DNA of 64,000 nucleotides from Ascidiella aspersa (lineage: Eukaryota). The stretch is from NCBI GenBank assembly GCA_963924565.1, contig OZ004608.1, forward strand, positions 17,546,001-17,610,000, written 5' to 3'. Every line of letters starts with the position of its first letter. The stretch's first letter is position 1. Below the pieces are notes generated by a model. The model was not told the DNA's origin. It did not search any database and saw only the letters and a list, made by a program, of their open reading frames with translations. Both the position numbers and the translations under genes were made by a program. Positions 41,501 to 60,206 of this stretch are shown in pieces.

Positions 41501-44500
41501 GTTACCCTTTGTATACATCGTTTAAGCTATACTTAAACATGTCCAATGTATTTTTTATCATTTTATGTCATGTTCTAGATGGTGGTGCTGCTGCAGCTGC
41601 TGAAGAAGTGCCCCAGGAGGACAGAGTATATACATACCAACCACCAGAGGCAAAGGAGTGGGCAACACAGGGTAGCCAGGTTGAAGTTGAAGATGAAATG
41701 GTATTGGACACTAGGGAAAAGGTAACTTGAATGTTTACAAGTAAACTCAGAGCAATTTTTTACAGGGGATAAATCTGCATACTTACCTTTGGTCTCCGGC
41801 CTAAATTATGTTGTTGTGGCTAAAAAATAAACAAAAAACAAAAGCAATTTCATTAAGGATAAATGCATGGTTCACTTATTGATATAAGTTGATCCATAGC
41901 TTGTCACATAAAACTTACAGTAGTTTATGTCTAAAAAGGTTAAATCTAATATTATAAGTATAACTATACATTTTTTAACATTATTAAATATTTAATTTGA
42001 TTAGCTTAAGTTCTGTTGTCAGTTGTTCTGCTCAGATAAAACTTTGTAATATCTATCTTTCTTACAACATATCAGGAAAACTTTAAGTATAGTTTTACAT
42101 GCACTAAATCCAAATGACATTATAGATTCGCAAAATTATAATAAATGGTGCTTATCAAATCTAAGTGAAGTCCAGTAGCGGTATGAAGTCAGAGTAATAG
42201 TCCAGCGAAGTAAAGTAAAACAAACGTTTTCTAAGTAAGTAAAACAGTTGTTACGTGTTCATAAAATAAAGCTGTAACGCAGTACGTTCGATGTATAACC
42301 CGTTTTGCGACTGTGAAAAACCTGGCCTTACAAACATTTCCATGAGAAAAACGTGAAGTAATGTTTTAGCAAGATTGCAGCCCTAACTCATGTTGCGATA
42401 TGCAACACCCTCCAACAAAATTGAAGTACCACTGTAAAAAGCCTACTGGAGGGTCTGTCGTTTAATTACAAAAATTATTTAGATAAAAGTCAGAGCATCT
42501 CGGGTGCGAAGGGAGTTTGGTTCTGCTTACAAGTTCATCGACCGTGATGCCGACCCAGCATCAACAGACCAGGGTTTGTCAGCTTCCTACTTGTCATGCA
42601 ACTCTTACTCAGACAAAAACTTCACCATTAGAAAGGTGGAATTAGACACTGCAGTGCAAGCAGTGCCAGAGCTGTTGGATGGGTCTTCTCAAACTGACTG
42701 GTGAGTTAATACTTACCTTGTGACATGAAAATGTACTGAATTGTATGTAGTTTTGTAATGGCAACACTGAAACTGTGTCAGACATTATAGGAAAATTTAT
42801 TTTTGCTTGTTTTAATTGTTATCATTTTAGAAAGCTATCGAATAAGTGTATTGCTAATATGTTTTCAGTTCTATACACATTAGTGAATAAATATAATAAA
42901 TACTGTTTTCAAGCACAGAAAATAAGTATACAGATATGCAACATAATTTTATATGGACTTTAATAGCTGTAGTAATTTAGCCAATCATCTGATCGTTTTA
43001 ACATTACTTTCTGCCTTTAATTTGTTACAGCCTAAAACTTTTTTAAAGACTGGTTAACTGTTGTGTTCCTAAATAAAGTATATGGTATGATATTTTCAGG
43101 AAGCATCCTGTTAATGCCTCTAACCAATATGAGGCAAGAGCCCTGACTGAGGAAGAAGCAAAACAAGCCCTGGATGCTGCTGAGTTTGAAGAGTTTGTTA
43201 AAGATGCACTACCCAGGTGCCATCATAATTTTGTAGCGTTTACAACGAGGCGCTATTTTGCTAGTTAAATTTTTTTTCTTGGCATAAATAAGGGTTGTTA
43301 ACAGGGATGTCTGATACCTGATATGTATCGCCATCTGATACCAAATGATGTCATTACAATGATAGCAAATTAGATAAAATTGAAACTTTCAAAGGTTGTT
43401 TTTTTGAGGTTGTTAGGCCATAATTTGCTTTAGAGCTTGAAGGTCTATTGACGTCCAGTTGTTAAACTACTTTTTTTATACATTACCCGATATTATAGAA
43501 CATTCGTATTTATAAATGACAAATTATTGTTGGAAATACTTGTAACTGTACAAAATTCTTACTGAAAAAAAATGTGAAATACGCTCCAATAAAATTGTAT
43601 CAATTTATAGATTTGATCTTGCTCTTCAGCAAAACACCATTATGGACGTTTTTTTCAACGACTGGGAAGTTCTAGGAGACGAAGATACTACGTTTGGAAG
43701 CAAGTCGGACAGTCACTTAAAAGTAGGTAGTTATTATTCAGTTTATTCAGCATTGTTATAAGTTGATAGTTATAGCGAAACGACATTGTAGTATCTCTTC
43801 GGACAAGAATTTATCTTTTTTTTCTGTCTAACTTAAGACTTTTACCTTGACACAAACTTTCTGTATTTTTTCTTGACCATGTACCGCACTGTGACCCCGA
43901 AATATTGTTTCATACTTCGTAAAATTAAATAGATTAAAAGTGTAGGGATGAACTAAAACTCATAAAACGCTACTAAGCTTTTGGGGTGATCCAGGGAGGG
44001 AAAGAGATTCAGCCTTCCACAAACTGGATTTGCTGCCTGATTAACTATTCCCAGTACATGCAAACATTTTTGCGTTTGCGCTAATTTAAGTTATGTTGTA
44101 TGTCTTAGCCCCTTAAGAAAAAAAGAAGGCGTTTTAGCTTAAAGGCGCCGCGCGTCTTACCCTGTAAATTAAAATTTTTGAAAAGTTAAACGCAATAAAG
44201 AAGGCGTTTTCCGTATTTGTGATACAAAAAATAACATTTTAAACTGATTTACGAATAAACCTGATCAAATTCACTCTAAATAGTTAAAAACTGGCTAAAC
44301 ATCAGCAAGGTCGTTTATCTTATTAAAGTAACCTATTTACTGTTCAGGGAGGATCTAGGGGAGGCTGCACTAGGTCATACGCCTAAAACTCTCAACTTTT
44401 TCTAAGTAAATACATATGCGTGACCTTCTCGGAGAAAAGGCTTTTCCCCCCTCATATATTTTTATCCGCTTTTAGAAAATCTATTTTCGGCTGCATAACA

Positions 44501-47500
44501 AATTTTTTTAAAGATTGATTGTTTTATGACATGGGTGAGGGGCTATGATTATGTGAAAACTTCTGTAATGGGGCGACAATGCATATAAGTTCCATTGTAC
44601 TATACGATAAGTTAGATATAGTATCAGTACTCTCGCTCCCCGTGTTGGTTGGCGCCTCCCCAAAAGAACACTGGTTTATCAACATCGACCCTAGATAACT
44701 CAAATAGTGCAGTTTTATAATTAACTAACTTTTTGCCTTTAGGAATACCAATCATTCACCGACCTGCAGTACAGTAAGGACAAAACTGTGACGTGCGTGG
44801 ATTGGCATCCAATGGTAAGGCGAATATTTTTTTACACCCGTATTTTTTGGATTTCAATACATATGTTTAGATCAAGGGAGTGATGGCGGTGTCGTGTTGC
44901 GAGCGGCTTACTTTTGACGAGCGAATCGACGGCGCAAATCGCCTCCTTATGAACCCTTCTCTTGTGCTGATTTGGAGCTTCGCTGATCCCATCCATCCCC
45001 AGGTAGGTGTCGTTTAGTTAATATCCGTATTTCGCAACCTTCCTACCCTTTGGAAAAACAAATTGCTGAAAGACATTAAAAAACAAAATAATTGTAAAGA
45101 GGAATAGACATTTGTCTTTCGACAGGGCTTAACGTCTTTGACCTTTTTTCATATCCGATTTTTTTTGTTTTACCGTGTCTCTGAAAAGACCAAAGGCCCC
45201 CTCAAAATTACGTTTCCCTGGGTTGCATTTTATAATTAAACTTTCCTTGATTTTTTCAACACCCGAATTAAATTCACAAATTTTGATCAGTTGCTATTGG
45301 AAGGACCGGACGACATCAGCTGTTTCAAGTTCTGTCCCACCAACCCCAACATCGTGGCGGGAGGCTGCATCAACGGCCAGCTCGTGCTGTGGGACATCAC
45401 CGAGTTCGCTGACAAACTCACCAGCAGCCGAGTGAGCAACCCCAAGTCGCATCACAAGAAAGCGGTATGTTAATTAACGCGCGTTGTGATTGCCAAGTAC
45501 CAAATTAAAACTAATACACCAAATAAAACTAATGATTGAAAGTTGCGACAAAGCGACCTTGTAGAATTTGTAATTTTATAAAAGTGGCTATCGATATCAA
45601 ATCGTTGGATGACGGATTATTTTTTTTAATTATGCATTGTTTATGATAAACATTCAAGCGGTATAATTCATAGAAGTTAGTAAACTATTTTTTATTGATG
45701 AATCGTTTTTCATTTGTTTAAAATAGTTTGAGTGTCGCACTAACATATTTGCAGGTTATTCTGCTCGAAATCCCTTCTTTGACATTTATCGACAATGAGA
45801 ATCATTAGTGTTTAACGAAACGCTCTATTTATGTGTTAAATAAGACTTAACTCGCTGCAGGTATGCTATATTTATAAATAACATATAAAGTGATGAAAAG
45901 TTACAATCCATGGGCTGTTTTTTGTATCAACTTTAGGTTGCCTTGTGTCGTATCTTCTTGTAATGCTTTAATACAGGGGTCGGCAACCTTGGCCCGTGAC
46001 CCGATAATGTAATACTTGGCCCGACACTTATTCTACAAACTAGGCACGAGGCCATCCCTCATATTTTTAGCTATTTCAACCACTTAAATGCGAAAATGTT
46101 TCGCACTTTACACAAAATCTCTTTTAATATCTAAAGGCACCGTGCTCACCCTGTTACTATCAAAATTAGAAGTTGTTAACTGAATATATCTGATTGCTTT
46201 TTAATGAGCTCCGCGCGATTTTATTGAGTCTTTTAAATATGAGCAATGAGCATAACATTTCACGCGCCTATTTAAATTACACCAAAAACTTGTTTTATTT
46301 CACCTTTCATCTTGATCATGGATGACGTGGCCGTGTCGTCTTAAATGTTAAACCTTCTAAACGCGCTTCGCGCGATAGTTTCACTTACTGTCTCCTTAAA
46401 TTTCATTGGACTGATTTTGATTGGAAAAAATCATACGTCCGCCCGATTTATAGCTTTTCTAATAAAATCTTAAAAAGTACACGTTTTGAGCGCGACGTAA
46501 AAAAGGTTGCCGACCCCTGCTTAAAACATAACACGACTTGGTTTATATTTTTGCACAGGCCATGTTTGGTGAAGAAACGCCGCCTGAAACACCCACAGTG
46601 CGCTACTGCTGCGTATCCGCCATCGAACACAGCCATCGAAATATCATCACATCTGTCGACTGGGTTCCTGACCATTACGAGGTAAAGGTCCACAGTGGAG
46701 ATTAAACTTTGTCATTTTTGTTGGTCGATACCGTTTATAGTTTTTTACGGGGATTGTGCACAACCATGCTTTTGACTGTCTTCGGAAAAATATCATCCTA
46801 TATTTCAATAGATCCATATGTCAAGTCCACATTTTAGTTACAAAATGATTAAATTACCCCCAGCTTCAGGAGAAACCTACCTATCTTTTTTGTATTAATA
46901 ATAAATTTCGATAATAATAGTGTTGGTTTTGGGAATTTAGTTAACAGGTAAAGTCATGCGACGTAATGTTGTGATAACTGATTTTCCACTTTACCTTTTG
47001 CCTATGCAACGCACAATAAAGTTTTTCAAATAATTTAAACCACTGATGCTACCTAAAGCTTGTATTGCTCTTTTATTTTTGATTTTTTTCTTAGAAAAAG
47101 GGTTCTTTGGTTTTTACTAAAATATTCGTGCAACAGATGGACTTTGTGTTTTTTTTGTCAGTTCAACCGGTTCGGTATCCCGGTAGAGAACCGGATGTGC
47201 GAGTCGTGTCAAATTATTACTTGTGGAACTGATGGACACGTCATGGTCTGGGACACGAGGCCGGCAAAAGTCTCTACAAGGGATCAGGTATGCCATATAG
47301 TACTGCCTTCACGAATACTTATGACTTATAACCCGTTTAAATGTTGGACTGTCCTAAAAATAAAAGATTGGGTAAACGGCGCGAGTATTTTCGCTATATT
47401 TAGCTTTAGTTGCTTCTGTACAAACAGCTTTCCTGTAACTCAGCCTTTCTTAAACTGGGGTAAATTTGCTCGTTTTAGGGGGTAAATAAGCTAGCAACAT

Positions 47501-50500
47501 CCTTATCTTGTTATTTAGTTGTTACGTGATTTGCTGTTTAAATTCATCAGATTTTTCGGCAGTCACGGCCTAGATTTAGGTAGTGTGTCTGTGAGCAAAA
47601 ACGTGTCGGCGAGCAATTTAAATTTTTGTGCAATTTAGGCCTAGAAAGGAAGTGCTTTAATAGGAGCAATAACTGTACTTTTTAACACAGGGTATGGCTT
47701 AACTGGTCCAGTAATTATCTATTATACAGACACTGACCAACTCGTTCCTAAAAAGCAAGGGTCGCAAAATAACTGATGTAATTCATTACTTATGTTTTTT
47801 TAAACAATTTTATATATTCGAGGTAAATCTGATATTAATCTTTGTTAAAGAGGTAAAACATACGAAAAAGGTTAAGAACCCCTGCTTTAACTGAAGGAAA
47901 AACCTTCGCCCGAAGTTCTTGGCGTTTCGCAAACCTTTAAGCACCTGGACCTTTCGTGGAAGCCCATCATTAAACTCGCAATGCCGAAGACTGACAGCAG
48001 CGGAGACTACAGCCCTATTAAATTCAGTATTGCCGAACGACAAGGGGTTCGAGATCATGGTACGACTTTTGTTACGTCATCTTCTTATATTTGTAGTTCA
48101 AATTTCAAGACAACATGTCAGTACTGTGTATGAGTATAACTATCATAGTTTGTAAGTATTACTTTATATCAGTTTTATCAAAAAGTTGCAACGAGTTATT
48201 TACGAAAAACGTTTACTTGTAGCTAATTGAATAATTTTGCTAACTAGCTACTTTTTGTAATTTGGCAAGTTGTCATATAAACCTAAAGACAACAAAAAAT
48301 TTTTCGAGCCAAAGAACGATGCACTTTAACTATTAACTGTAAAACATGGGACTATTGAAATGAAAACAATAAATATATCAATTGATTGTCAAATCGTGTA
48401 CCAGCGATTTTAACAAATTCAGACGACGTCAAGCTTCTAAATTTTTTCATTGTTATACAACTTTCACAAGTTGTCAAATGTGATAATTCATTTGGACAAA
48501 CAGCAAGGGAAATTTAGTTTTCTGTTTATTAAAAAAATAATTTAATCTGCATTTTAAGATGGACTTCTGTAGCCACGAAATGCTGCGTATTGACTCAAAT
48601 ATGTTTTTTGGCTAGTTCCCCTTCCAGCCGGGGGCAAGCCCGAGGGCGGTGGAGGCATGACGAAGATTCCGTCGGCAAAGAATCAGAAGGCGTTGGACTG
48701 CATTAGCACGCGGTACTTTATCGGCACAGAGGACGGCGAGGTCGTATGCGCCGACATGAAGATGGAAAAAGATAACGAAACTGGAAAGCCCAACGGTCAG
48801 TCAGCGTTGCCTCATTTTTGGAACTATTTTGTGTCACAGTTTTTTTAGGCCTGAGCCGGAAGGATACGATAGCCAGCTGCTTTGTAAATAGATTCATGAA
48901 CGGGGTTGAAAGAACTCACCTGCACGTTGTTAAAATGGTTAAGCATTGTAATTTTAGAATAACGAATTAAACGGTATTTTTAATTTCTCACCTGATCATG
49001 TCTATATCATCGCCTTAAATCGGGGATGGAATCTTCCTATATCTAACAGATATTGTGCAGTGATGTGGTGGTGTGATTTACACCAATCTAAAGCTCGTGT
49101 TAATATATTAGGGATCGTTTTAATTTATTGCATAACAGCTTTAACATAGAAGTAACTGATAAAAAGTTGCCGCTTTTGTATTTGGTAGAAAAAAAATAAG
49201 ATTCCTGGAAAATAACAGGGCGCTTACTATTCTGCCGGAATAGAATAATTTCATTCTGCTAGAAGAAAAAGAATCAACCATTACTTTCCCTTTTGTTTTA
49301 CGATAAATTATATATTATTCATTGTTTCGTTTGTTTTGTTGTTGATGAAGTCCCGAAACCAACGTGGGCGGTAACCCCGCACGACGGTCCGGTCAATACG
49401 TTACAACGAAATCCCTTCTTCAATGACGTCATACTCAGCGTGGGCGGATGGACTTTTGGAATCTGGCGAGATAACGTCCTGGTACAGTTACTGCAAACTT
49501 CCTAGATTACAAGACTACCTCTGTACACTTTTCTAGAGTTTATAGTACTTTCAGTAATGCAGTGACTGAATAAAGTAATTAACGTCATCACGATTTATGG
49601 TCGACATTGCACGTTGACAATTTGGAAAGTGATTTAAAATACGCTAAATGAATACATATATTATTTAACGGTCCTTTTTTCGTTTACAAAGCAAGATAAA
49701 GTACCGTAAAGTGATGTTTTTAAATGGTGTATCGCCTTTCGATGTACACTTGTGCTCCTTAAGGTTAGATGCTTATCAATACAAGTAAAAACTCAAACAT
49801 TCTTATCTGTCGTAATTAAATTCAGCCATCTTATAACAAAATATGTTTTGCCAAATAGGAATCGTCAGTCTTTTATTCAATTAGAGTATACAAAAAAAAA
49901 TGCATAAACAAGCTGTTGTGTGTTAGCGCCTGGCAAATATTCTCCAAACTAAGTGTATGAATCCGACTTTCAATTACTGGTTTTTAGAGTGGAGCGATTC
50001 TTCAATCAGCTTGTGCCTCCAAACTCTACACAGCCGGTCACTGGAGCACGACGAGACCTGCCGTATTTTTTCTCGGCACCAAAGATGGAAATGTTGAGGT
50101 ATATGAAAAAATAAATTGGTTTGCTTTTAAGTTTTGTTTCTCTAGGACTCAATGAATGAAACGCTTAGCTAAAATGAATACACATTATGTAGTATATAGG
50201 ATGTCTGTATTACAAATTAATCTTTACGGTTTTTATAACCGTGTGTTGTATCGGCCACCAGGCTTCCCGGGGGTTTATTATAACAGAATTACTAATAGCT
50301 AAAACATTTAAACAGACAAATTTGTTGTTAAAACGTATAGTTTTTAAGCATTTTATTATAATTTTTATATTACCAACTGTAACAACTGTTAATCAGGGGC
50401 GTAGCTAGGATTTTTTAGATATATAAATGAGATTTGCGAGAAGCGCGAAGAATGTTTGTATTTTTGTATTTCAAATATCTTAAAAACTATGAGGAACGAT

Positions 50501-51558
50501 TTACCCGCAGCCTTGAGGTTGCTCACCACTGGAATAAATCTACATTGTTGATTTCGTTAAATGGTCTGGTTAATTAAAATTAGTAGTTAGCCTACAGTAT
50601 ACATTTAATAGAAAAATCAGGATAGTTATAAGCATTATAATATATCGTCGAAGCCTAAACTTACAAGCGTAATTTACTAATGGCACAAACTTAACAACGA
50701 TTAAAATGCTATATTTGTTAAAATTTTCTCTATGCATAGCCTTAAGTGTAAAAATCTTGCTTTTCCAACAAAAACTGTGAAGTTTACGTTTCAAGGTTTG
50801 GGATTTGCTGGATCGCACCCACGAGCCCCTTTTGGTGCAGAACGTCACCGCCGCTCAGGTGACGCAAATCGTTCCTTGGGTCGTTTCTAAAAAACAGCAG
50901 CTGATTGCGGTTTCCGATAACGTGGGCACCCTACACATTCTCGAGATACCGTGGAATCTTCGGCATCCGGCCGCAGGCGAGGTTTGTGCTTGCACTTCTG
51001 TCGAATTTCACGGAAAAATAAAATCGGTTTTCAATTCGATGTGCGACGGAAACAGTATTTAATTTAAACCTGGTGCAGTCTTAATTTTTTTTTTTTTAGA
51101 AAGGTTTTTTTCCGGTTAACTATTGAAAGTGTCGATCTATTGTATAGCTCGGGCTTTTGAAAATCCATTAAACGTAATATCAGGCGTGTTAACTATAGAA
51201 ACAAGGCGTCCAAAGCTATGTCGAACGCGAGACGAAGCGTCTGGAATATTTTGAACGACGAGCGGTGATGAGAGGAAATCAGAAAAGTGATGGCATGAAA
51301 AAAGCGGTTTGTACTGTTTCTTGTAGATTGTAGGTTATTTACAGTTTCATGTGTAAACTAAAGAAGATTGCCGTAGTACCTGTTTACTCTTCAGTTGCTA
51401 ATTACTATCCTACAACGTTTAATCAGGCCAAGGCTGAGGAAAAATCAGAAGAACAATTGGATGAAGAATACAAGGCAGAATTTCAAAGCTATCTTGTGCT
51501 GGAGAAAAAATTGCTTCAACAACTTGGAATTCTGGAAGAGGACAAACCGGAGCTGTAA
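38596..51558 (+). CDS. DNAI3: Dynein axonemal intermediate chain 3 (WDR63, IC140-like), about 20 exons
   Basis: KTQEIFEC..DEHVTEEEPFKLIKKEDI..RAAISDFHPVK, YDPDFKYGQNF, EYQSFTDL, IWSFADPIHPQLLLEGPDDI..FCPTNPNIVAGGCINGQLVLWDI, FKHLDLSWKP, GTEDGE, RNPFF, WSTTRPAVFF, GTLHILEIP; all match WDR63. Confidence 0.95.
39393..39968. mobile_element. hAT-Charlie-like MITE in DNAI3 intron 1
   Basis: TIR CAGGGGTTCTTAACC / GGTTAAGAACCACTG; perfect TSD GGCTAGAG. Confidence 0.9.
45974..46519. mobile_element. hAT-Charlie-like MITE in a DNAI3 intron
   Basis: Perfect TIR CAGGGGTCGGCAACCT / AGGTTGCCGACCCCTG; TSD degenerate (ctttaata/cttaaaac). Confidence 0.8.
47441..47884. mobile_element. hAT-Charlie-like MITE abutting a DNAI3 splice acceptor
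   Basis: Ends cagcctttcttaaac / gttaagaacccctg; TSD ctgtaact / ctttaact (1 mismatch). Confidence 0.75.
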
Positions 51559-52094
51559 AACATGCTCCCTTCGATTTTTTTTATTAAAAGTTGTTCCATG
51601 AAAATGTACGTTTTTTATGAAAATATTTTTATTACATGCGCTTCTATATTTACAAAAAAAAAGAAAAGTCAGGTGATCTGATTTCTGTTTATTGCTGCGC
51701 ATAAATTGCAGAGATGTGATTCTAGAATCTATACTGACAGCCAATGCAGACTGTGATACTAAACTACGTAGTATATTGTGCTCATATAGAAACTAGGGTA
51801 CGCTCTATGAGAACCGGAAACTTTTATGCGCTTGCGATTACACAACAAGGTCGATTTATTGCATAACGTAACAATAGAAAATTGATTGCCGTAAGCTCGT
51901 AAAGAAGCTTGAACAAAACAATACGAACTAATTTACAAGTTTTCTAAGGTCTATCTAGGCCTACAAGTGTTCTTAAAATAAAATTTCATAGCAGCGTTTT
52001 TATGTAGGCCTATGTTTTATATAATTTAGTTTCTCTGAATTGTTGAAGTAGGAAAAATGTTGTAAAAGAGAATTCAATTGTGTAATATTATTAC

Positions 52095-52486
52095 AAATTA
52101 AAAAACAGCTCCTCTGGTAATTGTAATTGTTAACCAACGTTTCGGCAACCTATGCAAGCCGCCTTCGTCAGGGTGAATAACACTGAACGCTTGTACAATA
52201 AACGAAAAATGCAAGGAAAAACGCGAGCAATGAAACGATAAGAAAACAATTAGCGATAGTGTTTAGTCCTTCCGCAGTTGCTTATAGCATCACGTCTGTT
52301 TTGATGTTCATGGTGTTACCCTTCTTATTGATGTTCCAAGATTCCAAATAATATTTTCCTGTAGGCTCACTCTCGTGCTATTATTGAAGCGGCACCAAAA
52401 TAAATTTGGTGGCTTTGGGAAAGAGTATGGTTTGAGAGTGCAGACTTTTTTTTCGTCGTTGTTTGCCACGTCCCTCTGATGTTCGA
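52095..52486 (-). mobile_element. Decayed Penelope-like retroelement 3' end (GIY-YIG endonuclease tail plus hammerhead-bearing repeat)
   Basis: The minus strand translates, through two frameshifts and a stop, to EHQRDVANND..SALSNHTLSQSHQIYFGAASIIARE..YLESWNINKKGNTMNIKTD. This is the EH..SAL..H..H..LESW.I..MN pattern of PLE endonucleases, and it is followed by a hammerhead motif. Confidence 0.8.
52127..52180 (-). ncRNA. Penelope-associated minimal hammerhead ribozyme
   Basis: Minus strand reads TTATTCACC-CTGACGA-A-GGCGGCTT-GCAT-AGGTTGCC-GAAA-CGTT-GGTTAACAA: intact core, 8-bp stem II with G-U pairs, palindromic ACGU stem III, imperfect stem I. Confidence 0.8.
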
Positions 52487-52773
52487 TATAATATTATTGT
52501 TACATAGAGTTTAATTAAGTGATGCTACATTGTTAATTTACATTGCTTATATTATTTTATTCAATTTTGATTTGATAAATAGTACACGACGAGCCCCTGA
52601 CAAACTCTTGCGTCCCCTAGGGTTTGATCCACAAGTTTAAATAGTTTTAGGCTTCCAAATTGACAGGGTAGTCAAAAATATCCCTTGTTGTTTTTGCGAT
52701 ATACCTTTAGTTAAAATATTTATTTTATTGTTGACTTGATTTCGGTCACAAAAGGGCATGTACACATAGACTC

Positions 52774-53114
52774 CAGGGCTGCGGAGTCGGTTAAAACTAA
52801 CACGAGTCCCGAGTCCGATTCCGATCAAATGTGCGATTTTGTCGAGTCCCGAGTCCGGCCTTGACTCTACATCCTGTATTTCGCCAATTTACGTCACTAA
52901 AATAACGTGGATGTAATACTTATAGGGTTGTCGTGTAGGCTGTTTCATTCACTCACAATACATGGTTCGAAAATCTTCCACCATATGCTATTCCACCAGT
53001 TGTCGGCCAAATCAGTTTACAAATTTGGTACTGCGCATGAGCATTTCGGACTCCGGACTCGGGTACTAGTTTTACGTTATCTTACTCGAGTCCGACTCCG
53101 ACTCCACAGCCCTG
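52774..53114. mobile_element. hAT-type MITE with GAGTC subterminal repeats
   Basis: TIR CAGGGCTGCGGAGTCGG / CCGACTCCACAGCCCTG; TSD atagactc / atagaccc. Confidence 0.85.
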
Positions 53115-54276
53115 ATAGACCCCTTCATTTTCTTACTTGTCGGATGGAAAACTATTGTAAACGTTTGCCTTGCCTACTTTTTATCTCGTTTTTGCACGCA
53201 AACCCCTTTTGTGGCCTTCTAGATAAGAGGTGTCAAACTTAAGTCTTACTGAAGACCGCACAAAATTATATGATCACGCCAGGGGCATCACTGAAATAAC
53301 AAAAAACAACAGGATATTCAAATATATTTGTTGTATCTGATGTTCACCATGCTTAATTTATAGTAGGTATGCACACAAATGGTTTTAGAAGTTTTATATA
53401 TACAAGGTGTATCCTCCAGTCATTTATCGGCGTAGCCAGGGGGCACAGAGGCCATGCCCTTACCCCCAAATTTTATAAATATTGTACTCTTATAATTTTG
53501 TTTTGTAGCATATTCGAGCAGTACCACAGCAGTCGATCACAGGCGCAGGCGCAAAACTTCGAATAATACACGGGCCGCATTTGTGTGTGTGAAGGACGAC
53601 CTGCGGCGCGTGGGCCACATAGTTAACACCCGTTTTCTGAATAGTTTTTAGCTTGTTTACCTAAAAACGTGTCCCCCCGAAAATAGCATTATGGTAGACA
53701 TCTTTAGAAACCTCTACCGTATTCCTTTCTTAAATACTGCAAAATATTTTAAAGTAATAAGCGAAACATGATATTTCTTGGTTAGCAAAGCTATAATTTA
53801 TAGTATAACCTTGATGAAATTTCAATTTTAACCAAATGTTTTACACCTACTAAATTATGCATTAAAACGAAAAATTTACCCCGCTTGTTAAAAAAAAGTT
53901 AGACTACAATCAGCCTAAAAGACCAGTCATGCGTATCGTAATGCTTACATTATTGTAAATCCATCCTCAAAGCAGCTGTTTGTTTTTCCTTTGTTTTTAG
54001 ATTAAGGACTATGCTTAAAACTTAAAGTGAAAGTTTATTTGATGTATGGTTAGCAACATCTGACATATTAGACTAAAAATGTTCGCGATTTAATTTGGTT
54101 GAGCATATGCGATAATGTATTGCCGAAGTGTGACTGAATAAATTCCCAACAAACAATCATAGCACACGGCTGCATAAATTTGACCCTCGTTTTCATACGC
54201 GTCGCACAACACACAGAACCAACCACACATCGAAAACACGATTGCAGCTATGAAACGAACTGTTAATCTGCGTGAA

Positions 54277-54748
54277 ATGTCTGCTACTTCGCCGTCTGCG
54301 GGTCCAACCAGTCAAGAAGCACAAACCAAAAAAATAATGATGGACTTGCAGCAGGAAAAGAAACGTCTTCGAATGATTCAGCAAGGAAGGTAAGCTTTGT
54401 AGGTGTACATTAGGGCTAGGCAGATTAGCAACTATTGATTTGTGTTTGTACTTATATAGATTTTCAAAAATAATAATGTGTATTATTTGCAGTGGAAACG
54501 TACCAGTAAAACATATGCCTTCGAACTTGCAACCGCCTATTGATGCAAGCCAGCATATGTTGGCCAATCAGAGAAATGCTCTACAGGTAATTTTCGAAAA
54601 CCCAGGGTACGTGTTTCAAAATTTAATGACGCTTTGTTTGTTTTGTCAGATGGCCCATTCTACATCTTTCGGTTTCTTTATAACGCAGTCGTCGTCGTTC
54701 GGTAACATAATCCTGCCAGTTATTCCAAGAGTTGGGCCAAACGAGTGA
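54277..54748 (+). CDS. INIP: SOSS complex subunit C (INTS3- and NABP-interacting protein); exons 54277-54389, 54493-54586, 54650-54748 (in-frame upstream ATG at 54250)
   Basis: Spliced product ..KIMMDLQQEKKRL..QHMLANQRNALQMAHSTSFGFFITQSSSFGNIILPVIPR matches the human C9orf80 C-terminus QQKAALQHAHAHSSGYFITQDSAFGNLILPVLPR. Confidence 0.92.
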
Positions 54749-55038
54749 CAGCATACCCAAATCTTATGCCGGTTTAACACTATCACACAAGTATTAAACC
54801 ATGCATTTGACGCTCAGCATACACAAATTGACATACCTTCTACGCAGAAAACGGCTATACCTGCTCATCCTTTACCTTGTACTAAACTTACCGTTAAATC
54901 AGTAGTCCAGCAAAGCCTTTTTCCCGTTAATATGTTTTTTCAGTGTTACTGACCACATATTTTCACTGCCGGTAATTTTTTAAAGATGGCTTGTTAGGAT
55001 AGAAAATTGTTTTTTATTACTACATTCTGGTTGCTGTG

Positions 55039-55476
55039 ATGACCCTAAGTTCACTGATTGGTCGTAAATTTTCGTCAGTTGCAAGCGTCGGACAATCGGT
55101 GACGCGCCGCCGCCGTTTTACGCAGCAAGAAGTGAGCGAATTCGCGCGATTAACGGGTGACTACAACCCTATCCACCTCGATGAAACTGGCGCCACAAAA
55201 TCCGGTGTTTTTTCGGCTGCAGTAGTTCACGGAACCTTGGTTTGCGGTTTTGTTTCTGGTATATTTGGTACAAAACTGCCAGGCCCTGGATCGGTTTTGT
55301 TCGCGCAGGAAATGCGTTTTCCGAAACCTCTCTACGTTGACGAAGAGCTTACAGCGTGTGTGACGGTCGCAGCCGTGAAAAAAATGTTTGTTGAATGTAA
55401 GGTTCACTGCTTTGTTGGAGAAAAGGTCATAATGACCGGAAAAGTCACGGTTGCAGTTCCAACAGGAAAAAAATAG
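55039..55476 (+). CDS. HTD2: Mitochondrial hydroxyacyl-thioester dehydratase type 2 (MaoC/hotdog fold), intronless
   Basis: FTQQEVSEFARLTGDYNPIHLD..VVHG..SGIFGTKLPGPG..QEMRFPKPLYV follows human HTD2 colinearly; short R/S/L-rich N-terminus resembling a presequence. Confidence 0.9.
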   Translation: MTLSSLIGRKFSSVASVGQSVTRRRRFTQQEVSEFARLTGDYNPIHLDETGATKSGVFSAAVVHGTLVCGFVSGIFGTKLPGPGSVLFAQEMRFPKPLYVDEELTACVTVAAVKKMFVECKVHCFVGEKVIMTGKVTVAVPTGKK

Positions 55477-56919
55477 TTTTAAATATTTGATTACGAAGTA
55501 CATTTACATACTTAATGATTCTGTAAAGCTAAGTGTTTAATACAGACTACTGTACAACTTACGTTTCTGAATTAAAAACTAACATAACAATGTGAAAAAG
55601 GCGTTTTGTATCCCATTCCACACGACACGTGCTTTACAAAAAGTGTTACCGAAAATGTATTGCCTGCGTGGTTCGTTTATTTTAAGTATTTTAGTCTGTA
55701 GGCCTATCCTAATGTTTTGTTTAATGAAACGGTACACCTAATTGTTCAGGAATTCAGCAGTGGCTAACCACGGCTAGCCAGCCCCATATGACTACTCACC
55801 CAGGTTAACCGGCTCGCATTTCGGTAAAGTGATTTTTGCAGAAACACCGTAGGCTACCGGTAAATAATGTCTTTTTTTAACAAGAATTCTAGTTTTCCTA
55901 AGGTTACGTGTTTTAGACGTTACGTTTAACGTCATCTCTGACAATTTTTTTGTGATTAGGTTAGAACAGTTAACGATCCGGTAAAAAAATATTCTGCTTT
56001 TGCCCCTTGATTAGCCTTCTCGCCTGATTCGCCTAGACTTTTGCATTGCACTTAGATCCTACATTAGTTTATGTAGAATCCAATTAAACATTTAGAAAAT
56101 TGTTTCTTAACCCTATTGGGGCGCCAACCAGTTATGAAGGCATGAGCTCTATATACAATGCCTATTTATTTATAAAGTGATCGTAATATTTCAATGTTAC
56201 GCTTCGTGTTCATTTTACTTTTATACTGTGATATGCTGCTTTACGGTACGTCGAATTACTATGCAAGGTTCATGATTTGGGACCTGCAAGTTTTGAGCTA
56301 CTAATAGTGTAAAATTGTTTAAAACAAACTGGTATAGTTGAAGTACTTCTATGTGGTTTTTCAACCAGGGTTGGGCGTCACCATGCAATGCCCATAGGCC
56401 TACTATAGTGTTTGCCAAATTTAACAATGTATCTCCAAAAACGTTTTGGTTTGGTAGACATTTTCTCTTTTCGAAAAATGACTTGACTTGGTCTTAAGTC
56501 ATTGTGTCCAATAAAATTGAACACTTCGAACTCTAACTCTGCTAATTGACGTGTGCACATTCAGAAAAACTGCGCACATTACCATCTCAAAATGTGCACA
56601 CATTTCGGCGTTTACATTTATACACATTCTAAACGCCACGGCCTCGTCTGTTGCACACGAGTATAGGTGCAGGAAAGGCCCTTTTTTGGGGGAAAAGTGA
56701 TTTTTTCAAAGGCATGTGTGACCAGGCCACTTTTAAAGTCACCTTTAATATGGCCATGTTAAAAGGACAATTGTGTGCCATACACCTGATCACGTTTTAG
56801 AAAAAGACGTCGCGGAACTCTCTGAAGTCACAATAAGTACCACAATTTTGAGTTAAACAGCACATGATCAAAATATTTTATGTTTCTGTTCCCCTGATAC
56901 CAACAGGCTCGTGGGATAG

Positions 56920-57446
56920 TTTTGCACAATGTGCGCACATTTTAAAATGGCATTAAATGTGCGCACTTTTTTGCAGTGTGCGTACTATTTAGAGTCGCTT
57001 TTTGAGTTGGGATTAGTGTTAGAGTTTGGAGATAGAGTCTAAGTTAAATAAATAGTTAGAGTTGGTAAAACAAGAGGAACAGCTGTGGAAGATTAGGAGT
57101 CCGGCTTTGAGGAAGAGTTGGTGGAACAGTCGGAGTTAAAGTTTGATAAAGAGTCGGAAGAAGAGTGAATGAAAGAGGCAGAGAAAAAGTAAAAAAAGAG
57201 TTGATGATAGAGTCGAAGCAAAATTCAGAGAAAGATTTTCAGGGAAACATGTTTTGAAGAAGGGATAAACGAAGAGTTTAGAGGTAAAGAGGGCTAGAGG
57301 ATTAGAGACAGAGGACAAAACGATAGAAAGGAAAAGGAAAACAGTTAGAAGAAGAGGCACAAAATTGTTTCCGCGTTACCTATCTTAAACCGTTCGCACA
57401 TTTTTAAAGGAATTTGAATTTTAAAATGTGCGCACATTGTGCAAAA
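56920..57446. mobile_element. Inverted-repeat element with a purine-rich core
   Basis: Perfect 29-bp inverted repeat TTTTGCACAATGTGCGCACATTTTAAAAT (56920-56948 / 57418-57446) around an A/G-rich tract; related fragment at ~56530-56605. Confidence 0.75.
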
Positions 57447-58639
57447 AATGCTCGTAACCAAACAGGGGGTGGATACGTTGAAAACTATTTGTCTTACATA
57501 ATTAGCAACGTTGACTAGTTTACGACTTTAGTATGCCTCATTGTGCGACACTCAAGATCGCACAATGTCCACATTTATAGTACACAAATGAATTTTAGGG
57601 ACGTTGAGTTATTTTTGACAGGAATGCAACGATAAACTTTCGGTAAACTTTGCTTGTGCGGTTAACAAAAACAGACAAACAAGCACAAGAATTGCTTTGG
57701 CCAAACACCTATCACAAAACTTACACTCAGTCATTCGAACTGCAGCTGTGATCAAGAAGCAGCATTCAAATAGGGCTATAGGCCTACAAAACACTGCAAT
57801 TTGGATTTTTTCCGTCTTTTGAATGGCAACTCTTACGTAATTGCTCTGAACGCGAATTACGAGAATGAAATCCAGTGTTGTGAAAAATCTATGACAACGC
57901 TAAATTATTTATACTTTTGGTACCGGTAGCCTATATATCGTAAGTTTGTTTAAAATAAGAATAAGTATTTTTTTAGATCAAGAAAAGTGCTCTGAAACCG
58001 GAGTGCCGCGGGACAACAAGTGTGCCGCGATATTCCCTGAGGTGTATTAGCCTACTTTCATTTCAAGGATACATTTTAATAATAAGTAGAATTACCACAA
58101 ATATATACATCGAATAAATCGTTATGCTTTTTTGGATTTACCGTTTGGTGAGCGAACGTTTCCTCTAAAACTGCCGCAACTTTTCAAAAATCTATTCTTG
58201 GGAAACTTTTTAAAATGGCACTTTTAGTCTATGCTAAAAAGTCGCATCGTGAAAAAAAGCGGAAATAGGCCCTGAATAATATAAATCGTTATGTTGGGGT
58301 AAGCATGTATGGAGTCACTTTTTTACTTTACCGTTTGGTGAGCGAAAATTTATTCTAAAGATGCAGAAAGTTTTGATCTATTGTTCTCGTGTTGGATTCT
58401 ATTTGAATAAGATTTTAAGCATAACTGATGATACAATTTGCGTAACTATAGTATTCTGTTCTTTTTAAATTAAGTTATTGTTTAAGATCTTTTTTATAAC
58501 CTTTTTGGTTCTGTTTAGATCTAAAATCTCGTATTTAAAAAAATAGGAATAGGTCGAATTAAAGTTTAGAATTCCTACTAGCGATGCTGAAAGTTCGAAA
58601 AAACAAGTTGGAAATATCGTTCGGACATTTTCTCTACAT

Positions 58640-60206
58640 TAGGGGTTCTTAAACTGGGGTCCATGGACCCCTTAGGGCAAGGGTGGGCAACATACGGCCC
58701 GCGGGCCGGATCCGGCCGCCGCTTAGTCACCACTCGGTATTGTTGTTTCAATTAGCAGTTCGCCTGTCACCTTACTCAAGTAATCTCAAAACAGGCCTGA
58801 TAACAAAAAGATATTTTTTGGTGAAACGAAAAGACTTCTTAACGACGTAAAAAAAACAGGCGTGTAAGCTACAGCAATGCGCATTTACACTTAATTAATT
58901 TTACTCCAAATTTTTCGATATAAAATCCTGAAAATTATTATGAACGAAGTATTTAATTTTCCGGTGTTCGTATATTAGCGTTAAGCCGGTCAAGCGTTCT
59001 TCGCCGCATGCCGCCCTATTGAACATTTTTATTAGCCTCGTGTAAAAAAGGTTTCAAAAAAAGGAGCGCTTCGCCGTCGTAGTTGTAACAGGCAGAGTCA
59101 TTGCACGCTTCATACAACCGGCGAAATCCAACTGCAAATATCACCGAAAAATTTTTAATCCTTGGATTCCAATCCAAAAGGAATTCGTATCTAATTCTGC
59201 AGTTTATGTCTAGTAATTTGAACCAATATAATTTGAAGTTTTACCGCCATGGTTACGCCTAATTGTACATACGCGAGTGGCAAGTTTAGATAAGGCCTGT
59301 CGCTGTGGCGACACATTGAAAGGGCTTGCTTTCAATGTAGCCGGGTACGGCAGTGTCTGCAGTTTTTGGGCGACCAATTACTTCGACTCGCAATAACATT
59401 AACCTAACAATTAGGTGTCAGTTAAGCGGTATTGGGCGAGCCACTAATTTGCTTAACTGCGTTAAGTTGCAAAAGTAACATTCCCTCGTAAAACGTGCGG
59501 GCCTTGGTTGAAATGCGCTAAAGGGTTATTTAAGGCCACCTTTAGGCCAATATTCAGCGAGGTTACGCACAGCGTAATCGTGCCTGTGGGTCCTGTAGTG
59601 TAGGATATATTTTAAAATTAATCCCTCCCTCAAACAAAATCAAGGTTAAATAATTAGAAAATAGATTTTCGAAAACCAAAGTTTTTTGAACATCCAACGA
59701 AGTGCAACAGTTTGTGTTTGATACATCACAGAGGATGTTGTGACACCGCAATTCCATAGCGTTTCGCGCGCAATTGAAATCATGTGACTTGAATGCCTCA
59801 ACGATGTGTAGCGTTTTTTAAGGTCGAACAGATAATTTTAAACAGCCGTAAGCTCCTAATAATTGCCGTTGACAGCGTCTCTAGATTCTAGAATACACGA
59901 AACTTAAATTTTTTTTTGAATACGGCCCGCCAAGTACTTCATTTTGCCATATCCGGCCCGTCGACTGGAGAAGTTGCCCGCCCCTGCCTTAGGGGTACGT
60001 GAAGGTCTAATTGAAATATTAGTGTATATTTATGAAGTAATCATGCAGATTTTCAAAGAAAACTTTCGGACCGAAATCAACAGATTTCTGAAGTCTATTT
60101 GAATCGTGACGTCAATTTAGGTCGACCGTGTTTTAATTTTCTTGGCTACCGTGGTGCACGCGAAGCAAATTAAAGGTCCAGGTTTAAAAATGTTCAAGAA
60201 CCCCTG
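58640..60206. mobile_element. hAT-Charlie-like MITE (outer host of a nested insertion)
   Basis: Ends taggggttcttaaac / gttcaagaacccctg; TSD ctctacat / ctctatat. Confidence 0.8.
58678..59986. mobile_element. Non-autonomous hAT element nested in the previous MITE
   Basis: Ends caagggtgggcaac / gttgcccgcccctg, CGGCCCG subterminal motifs, perfect TSD CCTTAGGG. Confidence 0.88.

What the first reader, a model, noticed from the sequence alone, without database searches (positions are those of the whole stretch)
54250..55600. INIP-HTD2 tandem: candidate bicistronic transcript or operon with a host gene other than RPP14
Seen: an intronless HTD2 ORF starts only 290 bp after the INIP stop on the same strand. 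The spacer has no AATAAA (only ATTAAA at 54793) but does have a strong acceptor-like TATGTTTTTTCAG ending at 54943 with no obvious donor partner, then a 3-codon uORF (ATG GCT TGT TAG). Established: vertebrate HTD2 is translated from the 3' part of the bicistronic RPP14 mRNA, and tunicates resolve operons by SL trans-splicing. Inference: HTD2 here rides behind a different small nuclear housekeeping gene. That would argue that the passenger architecture, rather than the RNase P-mtFAS link, is what recurs.
Basis: partly seen in the sequence, partly recalled or inferred. Interest (0 to 1): 0.78.

Follow-up and report, generated by a model that had tools for sequence, protein, structure and literature searches.

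The report
Sea-squirt INIP–HTD2 two-gene operon
In this sea-squirt genome the mitochondrial fatty-acid enzyme gene HTD2 sits 290 bases behind the DNA-repair gene INIP and is transcribed with it, most likely as one of the ordinary two-gene operons of sea squirts, which shows that HTD2's vertebrate partner RPP14 is not its partner here.

Summary
A three-exon INIP (SOSS-C) gene ends at 54748.

RNA supports co-transcription. One spliced RNA contig of 1608 nt runs from the INIP leader through the unspliced spacer and HTD2. Stranded reads from a second study cover the spacer on the + strand. The only splice joints listed in the gene pair are the two INIP introns.

The genome carries 354 exact copies of the Ciona spliced leader plus donor, in tandem arrays. 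RPP14 lies 22 Mb away with its own AATAAA and no HTD2 behind it.

The layout matches a published Ciona-type operon junction at 54943|54944: an orphan acceptor, no AATAAA, and an intronless downstream gene. No leader-joined or poly(A) read was seen, so a stable bicistronic mRNA or overlapping separate transcripts remain possible.

The scan has noted other operon-type junctions elsewhere in this genome, but not this pair. It is a new member of a known kind, of moderate interest.

The parts
53991..54249 (+). Transcribed 5' leader of INIP. The true 5' end is not mapped. An acceptor-like TTTGTTTTTCCTTTGTTTTTAG ends at 54000.
   Evidence: The X3 RNA contig starts at 53991, which coincides with a SNP bubble at 54021. 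X4 depth is 2.8 in bin 53956-54139 and 0 in the four bins covering 53220-53955.
54250..54389 (+). INIP exon 1, coding from the ATG at 54250
   Evidence: Sequence. RNA joint 54387>54491 with cut +2, GT..AG, 7 X4 reads and the X3 contig.
54390..54492 (+). INIP intron 1 (103 nt, GT..AG)
   Evidence: joints table.
54493..54586 (+). INIP exon 2
   Evidence: joints. The frame was worked out by hand.
54587..54649 (+). INIP intron 2 (63 nt, GT..AG)
   Evidence: Joint 54583>54647 with cut +3, 8 X4 reads and the X3 contig.
54650..54748 (+). INIP exon 3 coding part, with TGA at 54746-54748. This is the SOSS-C domain end.
   Evidence: Pfam PF15925, E 2.8e-12. It is the only SOSSC match in the genome.
54749..54943 (+). 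Spacer part 1: proposed INIP 3'UTR, which would also be the outron of HTD2. It holds ATTAAA at 54793, no AATAAA, and three ATGs.
   Evidence: It is covered by RNA (X3 contig; X4 depth 6.9-10.5) with no splice joint listed.
54931..54943 (+). Orphan acceptor-like TATGTTTTTTCAG: the proposed trans-splice acceptor and INIP poly(A) addition point
   Evidence: Best pyrimidine score of the 12 spacer AGs. No cis-splice joint uses it. Its function is inferred from the Ciona operon model (PMC1488885).
54944..55038 (+). Proposed HTD2 5'UTR (95 nt), with a 3-codon uORF at 54986-54997
   Evidence: The 5' end is not mapped.
55039..55476 (+). Intronless HTD2 ORF, 145 aa plus stop
   Evidence: It is the only HTD2 match in the genome. 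X4 depth is 7-13.5.
55477..55764 (+). HTD2 3' region, with ATTAAA at 55571. The 3' end is not mapped.
   Evidence: The X3 contig runs to 55764, where it ends at a SNP bubble (55765). X4 depth falls to 1.0 in bin 55428-55611.

Best explanation
INIP and HTD2 form a two-gene operon of the kind described in the ascidian Ciona. One promoter, upstream of about 53991, drives a primary transcript that runs through INIP (3 exons), the 290-nt spacer and the intronless HTD2 ORF. The transcript is then resolved at the orphan acceptor. INIP mRNA would end and receive poly(A) at or just before the G of CAG at 54943. HTD2 mRNA would receive the 16-nt spliced leader at 54944. That gives HTD2 a 95-nt 5'UTR with a single 3-codon uORF and removes the three other upstream ATGs.

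Shown: the gene identities, the splicing of INIP, RNA that crosses the spacer on the + strand without splicing, spliced-leader genes in the genome, and RPP14 lying elsewhere.

Inferred: the position of the junction, leader addition to HTD2, and poly(A) addition to INIP at the acceptor.
For: (1) Co-transcription. X3 behaves as an RNA run: both INIP introns are removed and depth is zero in flanking intergenic bins. It gives one contig of 1608 nt, depth 174.5, laid as 53991-54387 / 54491-54583 / 54647-55764. X4 is stranded RNA reads of the same species from another study. It covers every bin from 53956 to 55611, almost only with the first mate on the - strand, which means RNA on the + strand. Depths are 6.9 and 10.5 in the two spacer bins.
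(2) The only joints listed in the gene pair are the two INIP introns, so the acceptor at 54943 has no cis donor.
(3) The genome holds 354 exact matches to the published Ciona leader plus GT, against 0 for the reversed control, many of them in tandem at 584-bp spacing (leader sequence taken from PMC7986045).
(4) The locus fits published Ciona operon traits. The upstream poly(A) is added at the G of the downstream trans-splice AG. 16 of 18 upstream cistrons lack AATAAA within 40 nt. Unresolved dicistronic cDNAs exist. 12 of 12 downstream genes in unbiased candidate operons are leader-spliced (PMC1488885, sections 13, 14, 17). Single-exon genes make up 38% of operon genes against 15% of others (PMC2760879, passages). 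Here there is no AATAAA in the spacer, the strongest spacer acceptor is at 54943, and the downstream gene is intronless.
(5) Three of the four spacer ATGs, including a 34-codon ORF, lie upstream of 54944 and would hamper HTD2 translation from an unresolved mRNA (inference).
Against: No read joined to the leader and no poly(A)-tailed read was seen. None of the 23 loose ends shown lies in 53956-55800, but 140 more rows were not shown. The table of molecule starts and ends is empty. Only 128 X4 reads were laid, from about 6% of the run, so this absence is underpowered.

Bin depths of 6.9, 10.5 and 13.5 fit an operon, an INIP end near the ATTAAA with a separate HTD2 start, or a single mRNA with 3' bias about equally well (my arithmetic).

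The tool warns that a contig across two genes does not prove a single transcript. Assembly also clips short tips, so the contig cannot show or exclude a leader. The mRNA ends are unmapped, so the defining 'no intercistronic DNA' feature is untested. No other species could be checked for the same pairing.
Confidence: 0.6

Rival explanations
1. A stable bicistronic mRNA, as in vertebrate RPP14/HTD2. The mature polyadenylated mRNA carries both ORFs, and HTD2 is translated by leaky scanning or reinitiation after INIP.
For: One spliced contig holds both ORFs, and read cover across the spacer is unbroken. No leader-joined reads were listed. Vertebrate HTD2 is read from the 3' part of RPP14 mRNA (passages of PMC4705651 and PMC5932603).
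Against: A ribosome would have to pass the 110-codon INIP ORF and four further ATGs, one of which opens a 34-codon ORF. The organism has the leader machinery, and in Ciona all tested downstream genes of such pairs are leader-spliced. X4 depth about doubles from the spacer to HTD2, though on few reads.
Confidence: 0.15
2. Two separate transcription units that overlap or abut. HTD2 has its own promoter within INIP exon 3 or the spacer, with or without leader splicing at 54944. INIP ends after the ATTAAA at 54793. The contig was joined by overlapping ends or by low-level read-through.
For: ATTAAA at 54793 is a usable poly(A) signal variant (function recalled). HTD2 depth (13.5) is higher than spacer depth (6.9). 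The tool cautions that a contig across two genes shows no single transcript.
Against: RNA k-mers are continuous through 54815-54944 in X3. No pile-up of read starts or ends was reported in the spacer, though on thin data. In Ciona such tight same-strand pairs behave as operons.
Confidence: 0.2
3. The acceptor at 54943 is a cis-splice site that joins an upstream INIP donor to an HTD2 exon, producing an alternative isoform or a fusion.
For: Strong acceptor-like sequence.
Against: No such joint appears among the 15 joints shown (1 more was not shown), although 7-8 reads support each INIP intron. HTD2 has its own ATG and presequence-like N-terminus.
Confidence: 0.03

Closest known systems
Ciona intestinalis SL-resolved operons (Satou et al. 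2006, PMC1488885; Satou et al. 2008, PMC2760879)
   Same: A same-strand housekeeping gene pair. An orphan AG acceptor precedes the downstream gene. The upstream gene has no AATAAA. The downstream gene is intronless. Dicistronic RNA is detectable. The genome has the identical 16-nt leader.
   Different: Leader addition and poly(A) addition at the same AG are not shown here. The distance between coding sequences is 290 bp, and the mRNA ends that define 'no intercistronic DNA' are unmapped. This pair is not reported in the papers I could search.
Vertebrate bicistronic RPP14/HTD2 mRNA (Autio et al. 2008, seen only as cited in PMC4705651, PMC5932603 and PMC11837024)
   Same: The HTD2 ortholog is an intronless ORF downstream of a small nuclear housekeeping protein's ORF on the same transcript.
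   Different: The upstream gene is INIP, not RPP14. RPP14 is 22 Mb away with its own AATAAA. The organism can resolve polycistrons by trans-splicing, which vertebrates cannot do.
ARMC7–HTD2 fused gene models of insects and porcelain crabs (found here)
   Same: HTD2 sits directly 3' of another small nuclear-protein gene.
   Different: There the two parts are annotated as a single ORF, a fusion protein. 65 of the 120 listed hits cover at least 84% of the 311-aa ARMC7+MaoC query (my count). Here the two ORFs are separate, and ARMC7 is on another chromosome.

Membership tests
Ciona-type SL-resolved operon | Neighbouring genes on the same strand, transcribed as one precursor | tested here: met
   One spliced RNA contig covers 53991-55764, and stranded read cover runs through the spacer. 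Caveat: overlapping separate transcripts are not excluded.
Ciona-type SL-resolved operon | The downstream mRNA carries the spliced leader at an AG acceptor | tested here: inconclusive
   No loose end is listed at 54944 among the 23 shown (140 not shown).
Ciona-type SL-resolved operon | No intercistronic DNA: the upstream poly(A) is added at the G of the downstream acceptor AG | tested here: inconclusive
   No molecule-end pile-ups were reported. The mRNA ends are unmapped.
Ciona-type SL-resolved operon | The upstream cistron usually lacks AATAAA within 40 nt of its 3' end (16 of 18 in Ciona) | tested here: met
   There is no AATAAA anywhere in 54749-55038. This is conditional on the proposed junction.
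Ciona-type SL-resolved operon | The organism has SL RNA genes | tested here: met
   354 exact matches to the Ciona leader plus GT against 0 for the control, in tandem arrays of 584-bp period.
Vertebrate-type RPP14/HTD2 bicistronic gene | The HTD2 ORF lies in the 3' part of the RPP14 mRNA | tested here: not met
   The only RPP14 match is at C2:39598715, 22 Mb from HTD2. It has AATAAA about 75 nt after its stop, and the next same-strand gene has an L27_2 domain.
Vertebrate-type RPP14/HTD2 bicistronic gene | The mature polyadenylated mRNA holds both ORFs, and the second is translated from it | not testable with these tools
   This needs long-read cDNA and translation data.
[quoted passage not shown] | A MaoC/hotdog dehydratase domain with the conserved Asp and His of the G-D-x-N-P-x-H stretch | tested here: met
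   PF01575, E 1.1e-17. D41 and H46 are invariant in the alignment. The best PDB match is 3ir3, HTD2, at E 1.2e-28. The name 'hydratase 2 motif' is recalled.
[quoted passage not shown] | A mitochondrial presequence and dehydratase activity | not tested
   The N-terminal 27 residues have six Arg/Lys and no acidic residue (read). No predictor or assay was run.
INIP / SOSS complex subunit C | A match to the SOSSC family above the curated cut-off | tested here: met
   Exon 3 alone scores 48.3 bits against a cut-off of 27, matching profile positions 75-101 of 101. The six-frame genome search matches positions 66-101. Exons 1 and 2 alone gave no hit.

The most novel reading that the evidence does not exclude
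HTD2 is a serial hitch-hiker. In at least three animal lineages it is expressed from the 3' end of the transcript of a small nuclear housekeeping gene: RPP14 in vertebrates (bicistronic mRNA), ARMC7 in insects and porcelain crabs (fused ORF), and INIP in this ascidian (operon or bicistronic mRNA). If so, the vertebrate RPP14–HTD2 linkage reflects a general way of expressing HTD2 rather than a functional tie between RNase P and mitochondrial fatty-acid synthesis. The ascidian form may include a translated bicistronic mRNA.
Probability: 0.2. Interest if true: 0.6.

Novelty: new member of a known kind. Interest (0 to 1): 0.4.

Why it matters
The vertebrate RPP14/HTD2 bicistronic gene is a textbook example of a functional downstream ORF. 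[quoted passage not shown]

In a tunicate, the sister group of vertebrates, HTD2 is co-transcribed with a different gene and RPP14 stands alone. In insects HTD2 is fused to a third gene, ARMC7. Together these weaken the specific RNase P argument. They suggest a testable alternative: HTD2 tends to borrow the promoter of a small housekeeping gene.

As an operon, the locus is one of probably more than a thousand in an ascidian genome and is not remarkable in itself.

Tried and rejected
A scan of metagenome contigs with a three-sequence HTD2 alignment gave 20 loci, all at 45% identity or less, probably bacterial MaoC genes. I did not use them.

As an indirect synteny probe, I ran Pfam on 20 long HTD2 hits chosen from the 150 listed by the search of protein representatives. 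I picked those with extra N- or C-terminal length. One had Rpp14+MaoC (Tetraodon), two had ARM+MaoC (a crab and a wasp), one had GNAT+MaoC, and none had SOSSC. The other 130 listed hits were not scanned.

The search for homologous proteins with HTD2 gave only 10 hits and no named tunicate. The listing of cluster members gave no names for P0001 or P0002. Rfam found nothing in 50000-60000. Autio et al. 2008 is not held, so I cite it only through reviews.

Literature searches for HTD2+INIP, HTD2+Ciona and ARMC7+HTD2 each returned one unrelated paper. Within that library the pairing is therefore not in print.

They include the operon tables of PMC1488885, the operon list of PMC2760879 and the GFF files of PMC7986045. 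They might show whether Ciona's INIP and HTD2 are already an annotated operon.

I rejected the cis-splicing reading of the 54943 acceptor because no joint was listed. I rejected using bin depths to choose between the models because all three fit within counting noise.

The bacterial promoter/terminator scan, structure prediction and fold search were not run because they do not bear on the question. The species was not identified beyond 'ascidian with the Ciona leader; HTD2 60% identical to Phallusia'.
Full report
WHAT IS THERE. On the + strand, a three-exon gene starts with ATG at 54250 and ends with TGA at 54746-54748. An uninterrupted 145-codon ORF runs from ATG 55039 to the stop at 55474-55476. 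The spacer is 290 bp.

The third exon of the first gene matches Pfam SOSSC (INIP / SOSS complex subunit C) at E 2.8e-12. Exons 1 and 2 on their own gave nothing.

The second ORF is a MaoC-type dehydratase (E 1.1e-17). Its best solved relative is 3ir3, '3-hydroxyacyl-thioester dehydratase 2' (E 1.2e-28). The protein atlas places it with chordate HTD2 clusters. Its closest named relative among 1.84 billion representatives is Phallusia mammillata HTD2 at 60% identity. The conserved Asp and His of the G-D-x-N-P-x-H stretch are present. The first 27 residues are basic and lack acidic residues, as expected for a mitochondrial presequence (read; no predictor was run).

Each gene gave a single match in the 308.6-Mb genome.

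THE SPACER. The spacer also has ATGs at 54766 (3 codons), 54801 (34 codons) and 54932 (6 codons).

Of the 12 AG dinucleotides in the spacer, the one at 54943 has the most pyrimidine-rich upstream 19 nt. Its fraction is 0.74, the 96th percentile of 3245 AGs on the window's + strand. This is a crude score of my own, not a trained splice model.

X4 is a stranded paired RNA-seq run of the same species from a different study. About 6% of it was read and 128 reads were laid. Its reads lie almost entirely with the first mate on the - strand, which means RNA of the + strand.

- Depth is zero in the four bins covering 53220-53955.
- It is 2.8 in 53956-54139 and 6.0, 3.7 and 6.7 across the three bins covering 54140-54691 (INIP exons and introns).
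- It is 6.9 and 10.5 in the two bins that hold the spacer.
- It is 13.5 and 7.1 over HTD2, then 1.0 after 55428.

The only joints listed in the gene pair are the two INIP introns: 54389|54493 with 7 reads and 54586|54650 with 8 reads, both GT..AG. Fifteen joints were shown and one was not.

X3 has no recorded kind, but it behaves as RNA. It has zero depth in the intergenic bins, and it contains a contig of 1608 nt (depth 174.5) laid as 53991-54387 / 54491-54583 / 54647-55764. That is spliced INIP, the unspliced spacer, HTD2 and its 3' region in one piece. Both ends of that contig sit exactly 30 letters from polymorphic sites (54021 and 55765), so they are assembly breaks, not transcript ends. 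X1 and X2 keep the introns and cover the intergenic DNA, so they are DNA runs.

LIMITS OF THAT EVIDENCE. The tool itself warns that a contig across two genes does not prove a single molecule. Assembly also removes short tips, so a 16-nt leader or a poly(A) tail could not appear in the X3 contig.

In X4, no loose end in 53956-55800 is among the 23 shown (140 were not shown), and no pile-up of molecule starts or ends was reported. With roughly 8-16 reads per 184-nt bin, that absence has little weight.

The bin depths fit three models about equally well: (a) a junction at 54943|54944 with INIP at about 7x and HTD2 at about 13x; (b) INIP ending near 54815 and HTD2 starting at 54944; (c) one mRNA with rising 3' cover. 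What is shown is that RNA of the + strand crosses the whole spacer unspliced, and that the 54943 acceptor is not used with any cis donor at a detectable level.

THE ORGANISM. The published 16-nt Ciona leader (text of PMC7986045) followed by GT occurs 354 times exactly in this genome. The reversed control occurs 0 times. Many copies are in tandem at 584-bp spacing on contig C3. Earlier notes of this scan also call the genome a sea squirt and describe its leader genes. I treated those as leads and tested the leader claim myself. The genome is therefore that of an ascidian with the Ciona-type trans-splicing system.

COMPARISON WITH KNOWN ASCIDIAN OPERONS. I read sections 13, 14 and 17 of Satou et al. 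2006 (PMC1488885). These are the relevant traits:

- Poly(A) is added at the G of the AG that serves as the downstream trans-splice acceptor.
- 16 of 18 upstream cistrons lack AATAAA within 40 nt.
- Unresolved dicistronic cDNAs are found.
- All 12 downstream genes of unbiased candidate operons are leader-spliced.

Passages of Satou et al. 2008 (PMC2760879) report 1,310 operons holding 2,909 genes, about a fifth of all genes. Single-exon genes make up 38% of operon genes against 15% elsewhere. PMC7986045 (passages) reports a median intercistronic distance of 1 bp. PMC11155486 (passages) finds trans-splice acceptor sites in 9850 of 12,397 non-operonic Ciona genes.

Together they describe such a junction at 54943|54944. 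INIP would then have a 195-nt 3'UTR. HTD2 would have a 95-nt 5'UTR that keeps only the 3-codon uORF and sheds the three other ATGs.

I give this reading 0.6. I give 0.15 to a stable bicistronic mRNA, 0.2 to separate overlapping units, and about 0.03 to cis-splicing into 54944.

RPP14 AND THE EVOLUTIONARY CLAIM. The only RPP14 (PF01900) match in the genome is an intronless 122-codon ORF at C2:39598715-39599023, 22 Mb from HTD2. It has AATAAA about 75 nt after its stop. The next same-strand ORF encodes an L27_2 domain, not HTD2. So the vertebrate RPP14–HTD2 link, described in passages of PMC4705651, PMC5932603 and PMC11837024, is absent here.

It therefore remains open whether the link arose in vertebrates or was lost in tunicates.

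As a substitute, I looked for gene models in which HTD2 is fused to something upstream. I scanned 20 long hits chosen from the 150 best. One was Rpp14+MaoC (Tetraodon), two were ARM-repeat+MaoC (the crab Petrolisthes cinctipes and the wasp Trichogramma brassicae), one was GNAT+MaoC, and none had SOSSC. The crab and wasp proteins align over both parts (E 5e-76), and the N-terminal part resembles ARMC7.

Searching with the crab protein found 422 relatives at E 1e-10 or better. Of the 120 listed, 65 cover at least 84% of the ARMC7+MaoC query (my count). They are annotated in Hymenoptera, Lepidoptera, Coleoptera, Hemiptera, Thysanoptera, Neuroptera, Diptera (including several Drosophila), a mayfly and two porcelain crabs. 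Shrimps, a crayfish, cockroaches, termites, damselflies, amphioxus, a sea urchin and molluscs have stand-alone ARMC7 of about 185-210 aa. In this ascidian ARMC7 is an intronless gene on another chromosome.

HTD2 therefore lies directly 3' of three different small nuclear-protein genes in three lineages. It remains weak for three reasons. The insect case is annotated as a fusion, not a second cistron. I did not verify those models. And an ascidian gene has roughly a one-in-five chance of being in an operon anyway.

VERDICT. The most economical reading is an ordinary ascidian operon, a new member of a known kind.

I found no paper that mentions INIP with HTD2, HTD2 with Ciona, or ARMC7 with HTD2 in a relevant way. 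The supplementary operon lists, which might already contain the Ciona counterpart, were closed. The scan has noted other operon-type junctions in this genome, but not this one.

Noticed in passing
Proteins P0035, P0098, P0165-P0282: ARMC7 and HTD2 (MaoC) are annotated as one fused protein of about 280-410 aa in many insects (including several Drosophila species) and two Petrolisthes crabs. Shrimps, a crayfish, cockroaches, termites and non-arthropods have stand-alone ARMC7. My ARMC7+HTD2 literature search found no relevant paper.
   Followed up: partly
window 53980-54000: A very strong acceptor-like tract, TTTGTTTTTCCTTTGTTTTTAG (99.9th percentile of my pyrimidine score), lies at the start of the transcribed INIP leader. 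The roughly 250-nt leader downstream of it holds several ATGs. INIP itself may be leader-spliced here or nearer its ATG. The X3 contig includes 10 nt upstream of this AG.
   Followed up: partly
window 52668-53219: A very high-copy repeat: summed contig depth is about 41,000-50,000 in X1 against about 100 for single-copy DNA. RNA reads lie on both strands, and there are many loose ends.
   Followed up: no
window 55815/55816: An insertion polymorphism. Contigs of X1, X2 and X3 and 2 X4 reads carry 52 extra letters between these positions.
   Followed up: no
L001 1483-2517 (G000:C2:39598697-39599731): RPP14 is intronless. It is preceded by an acceptor-like TATATTTGCAG and followed by AATAAA. About 460 bp further on the same strand is an L27_2-domain gene that starts behind another acceptor-like TTTATTTCAG.
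   Followed up: partly
G000:C3 about 5.22-5.45 Mb: Spliced-leader RNA genes lie in tandem arrays of 584-bp period on both strands, interrupted by gaps of about 8 kb. This is consistent with earlier notes of the scan about retrotransposons inserted in the array.
   Followed up: no
P0012 (Phallusia mammillata HTD2, CAB3254706.1): The deposited 195-aa ORF begins 43 codons upstream of the likely true start, in sequence that looks non-coding. The Phallusia transcript model therefore extends at least about 130 nt upstream of HTD2's ATG. This hints at a similar long leader or co-transcription there.
   Followed up: no
window 55796-55979: A small island of + strand RNA cover (depth 3.2 in X4), separated from HTD2 by bins of depth 0.5-1.0. 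X3 depth there is 11 against 174 for the operon contig. It could be low-level read-through or a separate element.
   Followed up: no
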